Part shown: one piece after another, positions 1 to 59,342 of the stretch
Layout: each line of letters starts with the position of its first letter
How positions within the stretch are numbered: position 1 is the stretch's first letter
NCBI GenBank assembly: GCA_937625935.1
Contig: OW569358.1
Location: 434,001 to 498,000 of the forward strand
Reading direction: 5' to 3'
DNA from: Tetramitus jugosus
Lineage: Eukaryota; Protista; Heterolobosea
DNA: 64,000 nt
Made by a program: the position numbers and the translations under genes
The notes under the pieces: generated by a model
Seen by the model: the letters and a program-made list of their open reading frames with translations, nothing else
What the model was told of the DNA's origin: nothing
Databases searched by the model: none

Positions 1-58
1 ATATGAAGGTAGATTACCGAGTGGCCTAACTCAAAATAAAAAGAAATTTAAAAGCTAT

Positions 59-130
59 TGAGGAGTGAGCGAATTGAACGCCCGACCTGCTGATCTGGAG
101 TCAGATGCTCTACCGCTGAGCTAACCCCCC
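59..130 (-). tRNA. tRNA-Trp (anticodon CCA), intronless, 4-bp anticodon stem
   Basis: Reverse complement folds as a cloverleaf: GGGGGGT TA GCTC AGCGGTA GAGC A TCTGA CTCCAGA TCAGC AGGTC GGGCG TTCAATT CGCTC ACTCCTC A. T-runs follow downstream on the minus strand (Pol III terminator). Confidence 0.95.
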
Positions 131-330
131 ATTCCATGATATTTAGGATTCGGAAATCGGCCCGATTTTTTTAGATACGATCCGGTCTTGCAAAAGAGAA
201 TGAACGTGCAATCGCATCCCTGATCTGAAACTCATGAAGGATTACCATAACAACGTTGTTAAGTGATGTTGCGGTTTACAAACTATTTTAACTGTTCTTT
301 GTTGTCGCGAAATTCTTCTTCGAACAAGAA

Positions 331-2065
331 ATGGATTCAATTAACCCTGAAACGATCAATGAAGTTTTAACCAGGACTTTGCTGAGAGCGAAGAAGGATC
401 TCAAAGAGCTTGCTCGTCTCAAGAAGAAAGAACTCGGACCCAAGTCAGCTCTCTACACTCAGACATTTCTCGATGATGTCAAACAGGTGATGTAAGTAGA
501 CTACTCTCTCAGAATGAAAATCATATTGAAACCAACAAATCTTTGGTTAACTTTCTGTAATTGTTAGTCAGGAGGTAGGTGACGAAGAAAAGAATGAATC
601 GGAAGAGAGAATCAGTTTCATCAAGAAGAGAGGTCACTCCGGAGATCTGTCGAACATTCAATTCTCGGATAATCAAGCAATTAATCAGCTCACGGTAAGA
701 ATTCACTTTGGTCATTGTTGTTATCACCTCACAGTCACTCTTATCAACACTCCTCTCCACAACAAAATTCAATACAGGAACAATTGTTAGAGAAGGAAAA
801 TGAGTTGAAGAGAAAAACACTAACTGCTCTCAATTTGAAAGAAATATTTGCTCGGTCTCGTAATCTGTATGAACATGTTCCCTGTTTTCACTACTTCTAT
901 TCTTGAACTGTGACTCACATCTATATTTCTCTCTTTTAACTCAAGTATTGAGCATTTATGGACCGAGATGCATATTCCACCAAATGAAGCTGCTGAATTT
1001 GCCAAAAAGTACTTTTATCCAGAAACAATCATGAACTATGTGATCATGTTCCAAGAGATTTCCAAGCTATCAAAAGTTAGAGGTATCCAGCATCAAGTAT
1101 TAACCTTGATCGAACAACGAGAAGCATACATTCTGAGACTGCGACAGATCTCACAGCAACTACTTACCAACAAGCGAAGTTCTAACTCATTCTACGAAAC
1201 GACACTGATATCGAACGAAGTACCTGATATCATTCAAAACATAAGAGAAATTACCATACAGATTATTTTGGCAATAATGAGGTGGAGAGATAAGTTGACG
1301 AGGAGGCAGCCATTTACTTACAACTCTCAAAACTATATCATCAAGATGAGAAACGACTTGGATTTCTTGAAGATGACACCATTAGGACCGCATATGGAGA
1401 AAACATTCCCTTTGGAGAGCAATCCACTATTACTGCCAATGATTCATATCAATGAACGATTCACTTCATCTCTAAGTGTAAGTACTGGCAACCAGCAAAG
1501 CAAATTTTCTAAACCCTTAATGAATACCTCCACAAAATCCTTGAAACAGAGTGTGAATACATCGATCGTTGTCAATTCGAGCATTGTTCTCTTTGAACCC
1601 AATCATAGTAAGAATGTCATCCCGAATAATAGCAACATCATCCAAACAAAGAACTCTCAACTCTTGAAGTCATTAGAAGATCGAGGGGAGAAGTTCATCG
1701 AAGATTGTATTAGGGTGGATCGAGTAATCTTTGTAGGTGAGGACAAATTTCTAAATGAAATGATGGAACTGGAGATTAAAGAGCAAGCAGCAACTAAGAT
1801 TCAATGCTTTGTTCGTTTGTACATGGCAAAGAAGATTGCTCGACAATTGAGAAGAGAGAAGAACATCAGATATCGGAAGATTCAGGAGGTAGTTCAACCC
1901 ATCTCTGCGAGACAAACTGTTTCCGATGATCAATTGCAAGATGAAGAGGAAGACGCCATGATGACTCGATTGGAATCTCGATCAAATGGTGACATGGTAG
2001 GCTGTGAAGGAAGATTTAACAGGAAAATCTTCAATCGAAGAGAAGACCACGTTCAACTCGCGTAA
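331..2065 (+). CDS. IQ-motif/coiled-coil protein, probably ciliary; 4 exons (331-491, 568-694, 778-866, 946-2065)
   Basis: Phase-consistent GT..AG introns join the ATG at 331 to the 365-aa ORF; IQ motif AATKIQCFVRLYMAKK. Confidence 0.7.
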
Positions 2066-45777: not shown

Positions 45778-45909
45778 GATTTTCGAGTTTTTTTCAAGTC
45801 TTGCTCTCGTTTCTATGAGCCGACAAAAACTCTTTTGTTGTTCGGTTCCTGGATTTGAACTTTCAAAGGAATCGCGAACACGGAATATTTTAATAGTCCT
45901 ATCTCTAAC

Positions 45910-46785
45910 CTACGACAGATCATCTCTTTGTTGTTTCTTCCGCTCCCAAGGCTTGAGCTTTGACTTTGCTGTTTTGGTGGAGGTCCTAGTTGTTGTGGTA
46001 GGTGTGTTGTTGCTCTGTCTCGTGCTTGGAACACGTGCTGTTGCTTCAGTTGAGGTTGACTCCTGAACAGCAACAGAGGGTCGAGCTTGTTTCGAAACCA
46101 AGTCTTGCTCGCTCTTCTTGGGACTGGAATCCAACATATCCAAGAACGAATCTGATAGGTATTGCTTCCGTCGTTCTTTAAGCTTGGAGAGCATTTCAGA
46201 CGGAGACGAAGAAGATGACAGCTCTGGTACTGGTTCTTCGTTTTGCACAGTATGTGATCCCAGCTCTTCATCTTGTTGTTGACTTGAGCTAAACCTCGGA
46301 GCTTTCTCTTCTGGTGGAGATATCGCAGCCTCTGTAAGAGCATGATCTTTGGCATCTGGATGAGAATTGGAGGACGTTTTAATCTCCAGTTGCTTCATGC
46401 TGTCTCCAGTCAGCTGCAGCTTCCAACCCCACTTGGAGAAGAGGTTGTTCGTAGCACTCAACCATGACCTCACTTGTTGCCAGATGGACATGGAACGAAT
46501 GGATCTTGCAATGGGATGACCGGATCGAACAGTAATAGAACACACAGATATAAGAAGACCAACAAAAGAGGCAATGGTCAACCACTTGCTCACTGCATCA
46601 CCAAATGTTTTTGTTTTTCTCCTTTTTGCCGTTCTTGTTGTTGATCCTGTTGTATTCTTATATTGAAGAGGGAAAGTGTGCAACAGTGATCGTTGCATCA
46701 TGTGATACAATTCCTGATCATCACCGTAGAGAAGAGCCAGTGTCGTTGGATGATTGTTTGCATTGTAGCTGCCAAAATACTCCAT
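45910..46785 (-). CDS. Hypothetical membrane protein
   Basis: 291-aa ORF; one hydrophobic helix WLTIASFVGLLISVCSITV. Confidence 0.55.
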   Translation of the reverse strand: MEYFGSYNANNHPTTLALLYGDDQELYHMMQRSLLHTFPLQYKNTTGSTTRTAKRRKTKTFGDAVSKWLTIASFVGLLISVCSITVRSGHPIARSIRSMSIWQQVRSWLSATNNLFSKWGWKLQLTGDSMKQLEIKTSSNSHPDAKDHALTEAAISPPEEKAPRFSSSQQQDEELGSHTVQNEEPVPELSSSSSPSEMLSKLKERRKQYLSDSFLDMLDSSPKKSEQDLVSKQARPSVAVQESTSTEATARVPSTRQSNNTPTTTTRTSTKTAKSKLKPWERKKQQRDDLS

Positions 46786-51925: not shown

Positions 51926-54316
51926 TCAAATTAACTTATAGAGGCGAGTAACAAGTTTGTAGCCATACTTTTCCACTTGAAAGCGAGCTGAACTGATGGA
52001 GTCACTTTCCGAGAAAATGTGATAGAAGTTGATGAAATCCGGAGAGAAAGAGACTGAATTCTTATCTCCAGCGTAATAGTTTGCACTAGACCAATCATAC
52101 AGTGTGATAGTGAAGTCTCTGGACCATTTTTCTTTGTGTAATGGTTGCCAAACAATGCTGGATAATTGACCAGGATAGTCCCACATCACTCCAATTTTGT
52201 CCTTTGACTTGGAAAGAATGTGCCAACACCTTCCAGTGGGTGTTCGGGTGTTTGGATTCTGAGAAACTGCAATGTCAAAACCAGATTGTATCACTCTTGT
52301 CAACAGATGATCGAAGTTTTCCGAGATATCAATGTGCCTCAAGATGCTTTCACCAACGCAATCGTCATACTGCTTGAAGTTCAAAAATCTATGTTTCGAA
52401 ACAGATCCATCTATCGTCATAATCCACCCTGGCTTGTCTTCTAAAAGAGCGACCAAGTTAGGTCCCGAGTAGATGTCAAATGATCGATAAGGTCGCCGAT
52501 GAATCGCTCTCATTTCCACTGAGACAACACTGTCCTCGGAGGACAACAATCCAGACGAAACTGATTTGCTCTTTCGATTTGATGGGTCGGAAGATCTAAC
52601 CATGTTCACCAAATGATCGATGGGATGAGCCTCGGGCTTATAATTCAGAATAAGCCATAGTATGCATCGAACAAACCCAATAAAGCTAATTTTTGTCTCA
52701 GTTCTGTCTGTCACAGAATAATTGAAAAACTCTTGATATCTGTTATCGACAACTCCCTTGAAATACTCTTCCCTAAATAACTTCAAACAAGACAGGTGAG
52801 GTCAGCAGTTCATTAACATAAACTTAACATTTACACCTACCTTGTACTTCTCTAGTGTTAATAAGGTGGGATTGTATGGATTGTTGATCTTGCAGTATCG
52901 TGTAAAAATTGGATCCAGTCCAACCACAATCTCAGGCCCAATCTCAAACTTGGGAACATAATCCACATAGCTAAAAGACAATTTTTCTTTGGAGTACTTC
53001 GTAGCCTTGTCCACACAGTTTGTGGCATACACTCCCACAGAAACCACTCGACAAATCTCAACTTCAAGTGTCTGTTGATGTTCTGTTGGTATCACATCAA
53101 CGTTCACTGAGTTTTGTTGCTCTGTTATTCCCACTTCTTCACTCTTTGGAGTGATAAAGTTGATTTCAGATGAGGTATGACTATTTACTGGCACTAATTT
53201 TCCACCAAACTGGACCCATACTCCTCCTAAACGATCATCGAAATCTTGTCCTGAAATTGTGACAACGCTTCCTCCATCGTGAGATCCTTTATCTGGATAC
53301 AAGGATTTCAAGGAAGGTACCCGAACAGAATTCAGATCAAACATATCATTTTGCAAGGAAACACCGAAATATCGATCGTACGGCTCAGACCACGACTCTA
53401 TGAACGCTATGATCTTTTCATGGTTGGTGGTGTAGAGTTTCGTGTATTGAGGTTTCGAGTAAATATAGAGAGCAATTCGAAGTACACAATCAGCAAACTG
53501 CTTAAGATCCAAGTACATTGAGTCCATGTCGCGTTCATTCTGCTCAAATAGTCTGAAGAATCGAACGACGTCCATAGGAGATATCTGACTCGGATAAAAC
53601 TGAAACTTCTTAGCCCAAGTGTTGAATGATTCTATCGACATTACATATCTCTTCTCGTTGTTTGTAATTTCGTCAGTATTATCATCAATATTCTCTGAGT
53701 ATGTCTCAAATATCTTCGTCATGAATTAGCATTATTCGAACTCTTGTAGAATCGAGGCTGATAGTTTCTCTACTTACTCTCTCAAAACACTTTTCATAAG
53801 TATAATAGAGCTTCATATACGAATAATCATCACTGAATGAAATAGTGGGCGTCGCATTGAGGTACATTGGCAGAATACTATCATTCGAAAAAATATCACT
53901 GAGCATTTTCTCAAACGCCTCTATTCTTTTCTCGCTCTTCTGTTTCAGCTTACTTCTTAGGCAAGCAACCTCATATAGAGCAATGATAAAGTTCTCAAAT
54001 CTCATATCATGATTGTTTCCTGATGTCGCTACATAAATCAAATCAATATCCTTTTGACTAATACTTGAATCAATGAAGCCAAAGGTATCCAGGAATGCTC
54101 GAAACTTGGCAGAAGAAAGAAATTGAGGGAATGTTCTGCCTCCTCCATGAACGCAGGCACCTTTGAAAATCTCCCTTAATTTTGCTGCAATCAACAATGT
54201 CAGAACGGCGGCCTTCACATCCAGAGTACTAGGTTTTACATACCCTGAATTGCAGCATTTTCTCTGCTCCTGATAAAAGATAGGGCATCATGCATGTGAT
54301 CATTGCTGCTCGGCAT
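51926..54316 (-). CDS. Multi-exon protein with EF-hand-like helical repeats and an IPT/TIG domain; introns 52781-52840, 53714-53777 and one near 54187-54243
   Basis: Phase-0 GTAGGT/GTAAGT introns join three ORFs; TIG motif LKSLYPDKGSHDGGSVVTISGQDF...V.FGG....EINFITP; first exon uncertain. Confidence 0.7.
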
Positions 54317-59271: not shown

Positions 59272-59342
59272 GCATCTGTAGTGTAGGGGTATCATGCAGC
59301 GTTGCCATCGCTGCGACCCGGGTTCGAATCCCGGCAGATGCA
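59272..59342 (+). tRNA. tRNA-Gly (anticodon GCC)
   Basis: GCATCTG...GCAGCG TTGCCAT CGCTGC...CCGGGTTCGAATCCCGG CAGATGC A, followed by a TTTTT terminator. Confidence 0.96.

What the first reader, a model, noticed from the sequence alone, without database searches (positions are those of the whole stretch)
59..130. tRNA-Trp(CCA) with an unpinned 4-bp anticodon stem: candidate natural UGA-readthrough tRNA
Seen in sequence: the anticodon arm is TCTGA-CTCCAGA-TCAGC, so the top pair is U27:C43 (a mismatch) and only 4 pairs remain. The usual eukaryotic tRNA-Trp has TCTGA...TCAGA (U27-A43). All other arms pair normally, so this does not look like general decay. Established: a 4-bp anticodon-stem tRNA-Trp(CCA) helps Blastocrithidia nonstop and Condylostoma decode UGA as Trp, and unpinning that pair raises UGA readthrough in other eukaryotes. 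Inference: this protist may have leaky or context-dependent UGA decoding, an early stage of stop-codon reassignment, or may import this tRNA to read mitochondrial UGA. Conserved ORFs here use TGG for Trp and have no in-frame TGA, so wholesale reassignment is not supported.
Basis: partly seen in the sequence, partly recalled or inferred. Interest (0 to 1): 0.8.

Follow-up and report, generated by a model that had tools for sequence, protein, structure and literature searches.

The report
Amoeba's only tryptophan tRNA, short stem

Summary
Window 59-130 (minus strand) is a tRNA-Trp(CCA) gene with anticodon arm UCUGA-CUCCAGA-UCAGC, so U27:C43 is unpaired and 4 pairs remain. It is not a lone or decayed copy: all 7 nuclear tRNA-Trp genes are 100% identical, each has a T-run terminator, and a tRNA-Trp covariance model finds no other copy. 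The base appears unchanged in independent sequencing runs. A distant relative (WGS JAESGV01) has the same U27:C43 plus a second A27:U43 (5-bp) gene.

- **UGA still terminates:** it ends about 21% of 109 long ORFs, including eRF1's own gene at its conserved C-terminus.
- **No sense TGA found:** the in-frame TGA examined in the window lies in a 60-nt intron. One more, in an HSP70-like match, could not be fetched.
- **eRF1 is canonical,** including Ser70.
- **A tRNA-Sec(UCA) exists.**
- **Mitochondrial import is refuted:** the mitochondrion has its own tRNA-Trp(CCA) and no UGA in its large genes.

Most likely this is the normal UGG decoder of a heterolobosean-like lineage with a standard code, and at most mildly raised UGA misreading. 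The scan had noted the same tRNA on two other pieces of this genome. Actual readthrough is untested.

The parts
59..130 (-). tRNA-Trp(CCA) gene, 72 nt, one of 7 identical nuclear copies
   Evidence: ARAGORN; Rfam RF00005 at 61.1 bits; 7 copies at 100% identity; Trp covariance model at 89.6 bits
89..89 (-). C43, the 3' partner of the unpaired top position of the anticodon stem (reads G on the + strand)
   Evidence: Sequence; cmscan marks the pair as non-standard; no other letter in runs X3, X11, X14, X16
105..105 (-). U27, the 5' partner of the unpaired top position
   Evidence: Sequence; no other letter in the four runs
96..98 (-). Anticodon CCA (positions 34-36)
   Evidence: ARAGORN; sequence
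38..53 (-). Downstream T-runs (UUUU at 50-53, UUUUU at 38-42), read as an RNA polymerase III terminator
   Evidence: Sequence; all seven copies have T-runs within about 20 nt of the 3' end. That these act as terminators is inferred from general knowledge of Pol III.
131..190 (-). Upstream flank with a block shared by copies L001, L004 and L006. A second block is shared by L002, L003 and L005. Function unknown (promoter element or retroelement scar).
   Evidence: Flank comparison; not followed up

Best explanation
This is the sole cytosolic tryptophan tRNA of a heterolobosean-like soil amoeba. The best named protein matches are Acrasis kona and Willaertia magna. Its anticodon stem has a fixed U27:C43 mismatch inherited from an ancestor shared with at least one distant relative. 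It decodes UGG. The nuclear code remains standard: UGA terminates, and it also encodes selenocysteine through a dedicated tRNA-Sec. By analogy with experiments on 4-bp versions of yeast, Trypanosoma brucei and E. coli tRNA-Trp, the loosened stem probably makes this tRNA somewhat better at misreading UGA. A fully canonical eRF1 keeps that at a tolerated background level. **Shown:** gene structure, copy number, identity of copies, conservation, canonical eRF1, TGA use as a stop, tRNA-Sec, mitochondrial self-sufficiency. **Inferred:** expression level, the size of any UGA misreading, and that eRF1 outcompetes the tRNA.
For: - **Only tRNA-Trp type:** 7 of 7 nuclear genes are identical with C43 and no other Trp-like gene exists.
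- **Terminators present** on all copies.
- **Independent data:** C43 is in contigs of four runs, including a soil metatranscriptome. An own-species run has about 100-fold more depth over the tRNA than over its flanks.
- **Conservation:** relative JAESGV01 has the same U27:C43 arm on a diverged acceptor stem, while its best-matching proteins are 45-70% identical to ours.
- **Stop use:** TAA 71, TGA 23, TAG 15 among 109 ORFs of at least 200 aa in 250 kb.
- **eRF1's own stop:** the gene ends in TGA exactly at the C-terminus conserved with human eRF1.
- **Introns explain in-frame stops:** the in-frame TGA and TAG of the window lie in 60-nt GTAGGT...AG introns.
- **Conserved families:** 34 HSP70 and tubulin matches contain 1 TGA, 2 TAG and 3 TAA, so there is no TGA excess.
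- **eRF1 motifs:** GTS, E55, TASNIKS, Ser70 and YxCxxxF are all canonical, and Ser70 is invariant in relatives.
- **tRNA-Sec(UCA)** is present.
- **Literature:** 6.5% of standard-code bacteria have only 4-bp tRNA-Trp (PMC13092985), and Paramecium biaurelia has a 4-bp copy without UGA=Trp (bioRxiv 10.1101/2023.10.09.561518). A short stem alone therefore does not imply reassignment.
Against: - Shortening the stem raised UGA readthrough about 7-fold in yeast (bioRxiv 10.1101/2023.06.19.543857, citing Kachale 2023). A non-trivial effect here is plausible and was not measured.
- In the papers I could read, every eukaryote named as carrying mainly or only 4-bp tRNA-Trp does translate UGA.
- An in-frame stop immediately follows TGA in 4 of 19 ORFs, against 4 of 61 after TAA. 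The numbers are too small to settle whether this hints at back-up stops.
- The stop statistics rest on only 250 kb and on ORFs, not gene models.
- An earlier unchecked note reports a 92-codon open extension behind a TGA stop elsewhere in this genome.
Confidence: 0.65

Rival explanations
1. Functional, selected UGA readthrough. The unpinned tRNA-Trp makes UGA a leaky or context-dependent stop that the lineage has lived with for a long time. This would be a stable ambiguous intermediate, producing C-terminally extended proteins or regulating genes such as eRF1 through their own UGA stops.
For: - It is the only tRNA-Trp type and is conserved across a deep split.
- C28:G42 fits the pyrimidine28:purine42 arrangement reported to favour readthrough-inducing tRNAs (bioRxiv 10.1101/2023.06.19.543857).
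- 4-bp stems raise UGA readthrough in three tested systems (PMC13092985; bioRxiv 10.1101/2023.06.19.543857).
- The eRF1 gene ends in UGA followed by a 62-codon open frame.
- There is a weak excess of immediate back-up stops after TGA.
Against: - eRF1 is canonical, including Ser70.
- TGA is used at an ordinary frequency.
- No TGA excess occurs inside conserved genes.
- The specific U:C mismatch has not been tested. Simulations suggest that mismatch identity matters, and the C:C variant is predicted to be incompetent (PMC13092985).
- The relative keeps a 5-bp isodecoder as well.
Confidence: 0.2
2. Structurally silent mismatch. U27:C43 forms a non-Watson-Crick (water-mediated or protonated) pair, or is stabilised by a modification such as pseudouridine 27 and by stacking under A26. 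The stem would then behave as 5 bp and decoding would be unchanged.
For: - Nearest-neighbour energies put the loss at only about 2 kcal/mol for the cloverleaf.
- Simulations of unpinned E. coli variants show that residual hydrogen bonds often persist at the mutated pair (PMC13092985).
- The organism shows no signs of code change.
Against: - No direct evidence exists for such a pair or modification here.
- Pyrimidine-pyrimidine C:U variants are among the readthrough-competent and flexible ones in bacteria (PMC13092985).
- cmscan and the energy models treat U:C as unpaired.
Confidence: 0.12
3. The nuclear tRNA-Trp is imported into mitochondria to read UGA there.
For: The only support is analogy with trypanosomatids, where imported tRNA-Trp is edited to read mitochondrial UGA (as described in bioRxiv 10.1101/2023.10.09.561518).
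Against: - The mitochondrial genome (contig C54, 49,460 bp) encodes its own tRNA-Trp(CCA).
- Its large ORFs contain 0 TGA and use TGG; for example, one 647-codon ORF has 17 TGG.
Confidence: 0.01
4. Assembly or sequencing error, or an unexpressed pseudogene copy.
For: None found.
Against: - Seven identical copies sit at seven loci with different flanks.
- The same letter is present in four public runs from different studies and in a relative.
- Arms and terminators are intact.
- No alternative tRNA-Trp exists.
Confidence: 0.01

Closest known systems
[quoted passage not shown]
   Same: CCA anticodon, normal overall length, top 27:43 position unpaired, no cognate tRNA-Trp(UCA), and it is the only or dominant tRNA-Trp type. 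Both lineages are protists, and Blastocrithidia also belongs to Discoba.
   Different: Those organisms have in-frame UGA as Trp, and Blastocrithidia also carries eRF1 Ser70Gly. Here UGA terminates about a fifth of ORFs, eRF1 is canonical, tRNA-Sec is present and no sense UGA was found. The mismatch here is U:C. I could not read the original Nature paper to compare mismatch identity.
Paramecium biaurelia 4-bp tRNA-Trp copy (Swart et al., bioRxiv 10.1101/2023.10.09.561518)
   Same: A 4-bp tRNA-Trp(CCA) in a eukaryote not known to translate UGA.
   Different: There it is at least one gene among eight. Here it is all seven genes, and it is conserved in a distant relative.
Standard-code bacteria that encode only 4-bp tRNA-Trp(CCA) (6.5% of genomes; PMC13092985)
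   Same: Exclusive 4-bp tRNA-Trp coexisting with UGA as a stop, which shows the variant is sufficient for UGG decoding and does not by itself reassign UGA.
   Different: Bacterial release factors (RF2) and ribosomes differ, and the usual mismatches there are C:A, C:U and G:A on a C27:G43 background.
E. coli tRNA-Trp suppressor mutations: Hirsh G24A, A9C and the Schultz-Yarus 27:43 mutants
   Same: A change outside the anticodon, next to the D/anticodon-stem hinge, that can relax decoding.
   Different: Positions 9 and 24 are wild-type here (A9; C11-G24 pair). This is a natural, fixed eukaryotic gene, not a laboratory mutant.

Membership tests
Eukaryotic cytosolic tRNA-Trp | Cloverleaf tRNA with anticodon CCA | tested here: met
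   ARAGORN; Rfam RF00005 at 61.1 bits; aligns with 10 other eukaryote-like tRNA-Trp genes
Eukaryotic cytosolic tRNA-Trp | G1:C72 and discriminator A73 (identity elements for eukaryotic TrpRS, from general knowledge) | tested here: met
   The sequence has G1, C72 and A73. That these are identity elements comes from memory and was not tested.
Eukaryotic cytosolic tRNA-Trp | Canonical 5-bp anticodon stem (U27-A43) | tested here: not met
   U27:C43. Of 15 environmental matches to the same arm pattern, 13 have A43.
UGA-decoding 4-bp-stem tRNA-Trp(CCA) system (Blastocrithidia/ciliate type) | Top anticodon-stem pair 27:43 unpaired in the main tRNA-Trp | tested here: met
   7 of 7 genes
UGA-decoding 4-bp-stem tRNA-Trp(CCA) system (Blastocrithidia/ciliate type) | In-frame UGA at Trp positions in nuclear genes; UGA rare or absent as a terminator | tested here: not met
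   TGA ends 23 of 109 ORFs. eRF1 ends at TGA at its conserved C-terminus. The window's in-frame TGA is intronic. There is no TGA excess in HSP70 or tubulin matches. The sample is limited to about 250 kb plus two families.
UGA-decoding 4-bp-stem tRNA-Trp(CCA) system (Blastocrithidia/ciliate type) | eRF1 Ser70 (human numbering; yeast Ser67) changed to Gly or Ala. Swart et al. dispute that this is necessary. | tested here: not met
   The motif TASNIKSRVNRLSV is identical to human, and Ser is invariant in relatives
UGA-decoding 4-bp-stem tRNA-Trp(CCA) system (Blastocrithidia/ciliate type) | Measured UGA-to-Trp decoding | not testable with these tools
   Needs reporters, ribosome profiling or proteomics
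Hirsh-type tRNA-Trp suppressors | G24A or A9C | tested here: not met
   The D stem GCUC/GAGC pairs C11-G24, and position 9 is A

The most novel reading that the evidence does not exclude
A free-living heterolobosean lineage has lived for a long evolutionary time with only an unpinned tRNA-Trp and a wild-type eRF1. It would be a stable ambiguous intermediate in which UGA is measurably read as Trp in some contexts. That would yield conserved C-terminal extensions, or feedback on eRF1 through its own UGA stop. It would be the first eukaryote in which the tRNA change clearly preceded any eRF1 change or codon reassignment.
Probability: 0.2. Interest if true: 0.8.

Novelty: new member of a known kind. 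Interest (0 to 1): 0.55.

Why it matters
There is an open debate about how UGA becomes a tryptophan codon in eukaryotes. Kachale et al. argue that a 4-bp tRNA-Trp stem acts together with an eRF1 Ser70 change. Swart et al. argue that the eRF1 change is neither necessary nor sufficient, and they call for tests of 4-bp tRNAs in organisms that keep UGA as a stop.

This amoeba supplies that case. Every tRNA-Trp gene is 4-bp, eRF1 is wild-type, UGA still terminates, and a relative carries both 4-bp and 5-bp versions.

- If readthrough is low, stem shortening alone is not enough in a eukaryote.
- If it is high, this is a living ambiguous intermediate.

Either result bears on the tRNA-first versus release-factor-first question. 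It also bears on the design of readthrough-inducing tRNAs.

Tried and rejected
- **Search for a 5-bp copy.** I looked for a tRNA-Trp with a 5-bp stem or any other sequence in the genome.
  - BLAST at E up to 10 found only the 7 copies.
  - An anticodon-arm pattern with up to 3 mismatches gave no tRNA-Trp among the 23 non-Trp hits whose loci were fetched and scanned. The 117 further 3-mismatch hits were not scanned one by one.
  - A loose anticodon-plus-T-loop pattern was too unspecific to use.
  - The Rfam tRNA model lists only the best 63 hits.
  - The custom Trp model settled it: 7 hits, then a 27-bit gap.
- **Dictyostelid guess.** I first took the organism for a dictyostelid, because all mitochondrial genes lie on one strand. 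Protein searches point instead to Heterolobosea (Willaertia magna 48% on a sorting nexin, Acrasis kona 78% on eRF1).
- **Candidate sense stops.** Two apparent in-frame stops between same-frame ORFs (TGA at window 52802-52804, TAG at 45910-45912) looked like sense stops. Both lie in 60-nt introns.
- **More sequence.** I did not try to obtain those letters another way.
- **Synteny route.** A contig of a relative's orthologue of the neighbouring sorting-nexin gene ends before the expected tRNA position.
- **Papers.** The Kachale 2023 Nature paper is not held, so its details are cited through later papers. No paper mentions JAESGV.
- **P0028.** This 504-aa JGI gene call reads eRF1's TGA as W. I take it as a gene-caller genetic-code artefact, not as evidence.

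Full report
**1. The observation**

The window carries a tRNA-Trp(CCA) gene at 59-130 on the minus strand.
- ARAGORN calls it at 58-131.
- Rfam RF00005 matches at 61.1 bits, E 5.4e-13.
- On the RNA strand the anticodon arm is UCUGA-CUCCAGA-UCAGC.

C28-G42, U29-A41, G30-C40 and A31-U39 pair. U27 (window 105) faces C43 (window 89). cmscan flags only this pair as non-standard. The acceptor, D and T stems all pair, and the discriminator is A73. T-runs follow the gene at window 50-53 and 38-42.

**2. Not a lone copy and not an error**

The window is contig C15 of a 26.35-Mb, 56-contig assembly. BLAST of the 72 nt finds seven copies on seven contigs, all 100% identical. Their flanks differ, and all are followed by T-runs.

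I looked for any other tRNA-Trp in several ways:
- A search for the canonical arm with up to 3 mismatches gave no tRNA-Trp among the hits whose loci were scanned.
- I built a tRNA-Trp covariance model from this gene and ten other eukaryote-like tRNA-Trp genes.
- That model scores the seven copies at 89.6 bits. Everything else is at 62 bits or less; the 62.3-bit group is tRNA-Phe.

The 5-bp isodecoder of the relative described below was one of the eleven sequences the model was built from, so the model would have recognised such a gene here.

Contigs of four public runs were laid on window 1-500. No other letter appears at 89 or 105.
- **Own species (X3):** coded "organism A" by the tool. Summed depth over the tRNA is roughly 100 times that of the flanks. 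This suggests RNA-derived data and strong expression, but the library type is not on record.
- **Second organism (X11):** coded "organism B". An identical tRNA sits in different flanks.
- **Rhizosphere run (X14):** it holds the same locus at about 95% identity.
- **Soil metatranscriptome (X16):** it holds the tRNA.

These are contigs, so rare variants and editing below the contig level cannot be excluded.

**3. What the organism is**

The best named protein matches are heteroloboseans. Willaertia magna matches a sorting nexin at 48%. Acrasis kona matches eRF1 at 78%. Unnamed environmental relatives reach 68-89%. Introns are short (about 60 nt), of the form GTAGGT...CTGAC...AG.

**4. Conservation**

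I scanned JGI metagenome contigs for the same anticodon arm, with positions 26 and 43 left free. The scan gave 15 pattern matches in 14 loci.
- Thirteen matches have A43. A few of these are not intact tRNA genes by ARAGORN.
- The two with C43 are on two contigs of one WGS project, JAESGV01.

That organism's tRNA-Trp shares our D arm, variable loop and T stem. Its acceptor stem has compensatory differences (GGGGCUU/AAGCCUC) and its T loop differs. Its best-matching proteins are only 45-70% identical to ours, although orthology is not shown.

It carries three tRNA-Trp elements:
- a full U27:C43 gene (L081 3059-3130);
- a copy truncated after nucleotide 46 that also has C43 (L088 3222-3269);
- a second full gene with A27:U43 and C44, which is a 5-bp stem (L088 7283-7354).

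The unpaired state is therefore old and retained, not a recent slip. The relative keeps or has regained a paired version that our genome lacks.

**5. Is UGA reassigned or leaky?**

*Stop-codon use.* Over the 250 kb of nuclear DNA I could read, 109 non-overlapping ORFs of at least 200 aa end in TAA 71, TGA 23 and TAG 15.

*eRF1's own stop.* The gene ends in TGA at the position where human eRF1 also ends.

*In-frame stops.* Two same-frame ORF pairs in the window are separated by one stop. The TGA at 52802-52804 and the TAG at 45910-45912 both sit in 60-nt introns. The TGA is part of the CTGAC branch site. Across 34 HSP70 and tubulin domain matches genome-wide, the in-frame stops are 1 TGA, 2 TAG and 3 TAA. 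That is what short introns would give, and it shows no TGA excess.

*Release factor.* eRF1 (C32, 442 aa) is very similar to human eRF1 over its whole length (702 bits). It has GTS, E55, TASNIKS, Ser70 and YxCxxxF intact. Ser70 is invariant in the nearest relatives.

*Other UGA readers.* One tRNA-Sec(UCA) is present at 78.2 bits, so UGA also serves selenocysteine.

*Back-up stops.* An in-frame stop directly follows TGA in 4 of 19 ORFs, against 4 of 61 after TAA. This is suggestive at best.

**6. Mitochondria**

Contig C54 (identical in layout to C56) is a 49,460-bp, 23% GC mitochondrial genome. It has its own tRNA-Trp(CCA). Its large ORFs have no TGA and use TGG. The import idea is refuted.

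**7. Mechanism**

Published work supports a real effect of the short stem.
- In yeast, shortening the tRNA-Trp anticodon stem from 5 to 4 bp raised UGA readthrough about 7-fold. Similar effects were seen in T. brucei (bioRxiv 10.1101/2023.06.19.543857).
- A C27A version works in E. coli in vivo (PMC13092985).
- The 27:43 position adjoins the D/anticodon hinge. Simulations link unpinning to greater stem flexibility or to easier adoption of the bent A/T state needed for acceptance (PMC13092985).

Our tRNA keeps C28:G42, the pyrimidine:purine arrangement reported to favour such tRNAs. Nearest-neighbour energies put the cost of the mismatch at about 2 kcal/mol.

Other findings argue against a large effect.
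- Mismatch identity matters in those simulations, and U:C has not been tested.
- 6.5% of standard-code bacteria have only 4-bp tRNA-Trp (PMC13092985).
- Paramecium biaurelia has such a copy without UGA=Trp (bioRxiv 10.1101/2023.10.09.561518).

I therefore rate as most likely (0.65) that this is the normal UGG decoder in a standard-code organism. Wild-type eRF1 would hold any extra UGA misreading to background. Functional, selected readthrough remains possible (0.2). So does a structurally silent U:C pair (0.12).

**8. Comparison and novelty**

The tRNA belongs to the known kind "4-bp-stem tRNA-Trp(CCA)". The organism fails the defining tests of the UGA=Trp system: there are no sense UGA codons, UGA is a common terminator, and eRF1 is unchanged.

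In the literature I could search, eukaryotes named as carrying mainly or only 4-bp tRNA-Trp all translate UGA. The single counter-example is one gene of eight in P. biaurelia. I found no description of such a tRNA in Heterolobosea.

It is a new member of a known kind, in an informative genetic background. The scan had already noted the same tRNA on two other pieces of this genome (s1-548031, s1-553428).

**9. Limits**

- The original Nature paper could not be read.
- Organism names in the run table are coded.
- Stop-codon statistics come from ORFs in 250 kb.
- No measurement of readthrough, modification or charging is possible with these tools.

Noticed in passing
G000:C32:182407-183732 (L069 601-1929, minus strand): The canonical eRF1 gene ends in TGA-T and the frame stays open for 62 more codons. 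A JGI gene call from a near-identical strain (P0028, 504 aa) reads that TGA as W, most likely because the gene caller chose another genetic code.
   Followed up: partly
G000:C43:337335-338760 (L094, L095): A second, divergent eRF1 paralogue (40-48% identity) has SANRIKS in place of TASNIKS. An in-frame TAA plus a frame change lies right after the residue matching V66. Ser70 is kept. This is the subject of earlier finding s1-532671.
   Followed up: partly
G000:C34:157514-157599 (L089 1501-1587): A single tRNA-Sec(UCA) gene (Rfam 78.2 bits), so the amoeba probably makes selenoproteins.
   Followed up: partly
G000:C54 and C56 (L070-L074): Two contigs show the same layout for a 49,460-bp, 23% GC mitochondrial genome. 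All long ORFs and all 19 tRNAs are on one strand, the code looks standard, and it has its own tRNA-Trp(CCA).
   Followed up: partly
window 131-190 and the same flank of L001-L007: The 20-50 nt upstream of the tRNA-Trp genes fall into two conserved families (L001/L004/L006 and L002/L003/L005). This is either a promoter element or a scar of the tRNA-targeting retroelement noted earlier (s1-537724).
   Followed up: no
window 52781-52840 and about 45855-45915 (minus strand): Introns of about 60 nt with 5' GTAGGT, a CTGAC branch site and 3' AG. When their length is a multiple of three, they mimic in-frame stop codons between two ORFs.
   Followed up: yes
L088 3222-3269 and 7283-7354; L081 3059-3130 and 6327-6433: Relative JAESGV01 has a 4-bp tRNA-Trp, a 5-bp tRNA-Trp (A27:U43, C44), and a copy cut off after nucleotide 46 by unrelated sequence. 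It also has a tRNA-Tyr with a 34-nt intron.
   Followed up: partly
run X16 laid on window 58-130: A 110-nt soil metatranscriptome contig joins the 3' part of the tRNA, 7 other letters, and the 5' part. This is either tandem tRNA-Trp genes in a relative or an assembly-graph loop.
   Followed up: no
G000:C9:59869-60822: An HSP70-like match with one in-frame TGA. An intron is the likely cause.
   Followed up: no
window 59272-59342: A tRNA-Gly(GCC) gene with a normal 5-bp anticodon stem.
   Followed up: yes
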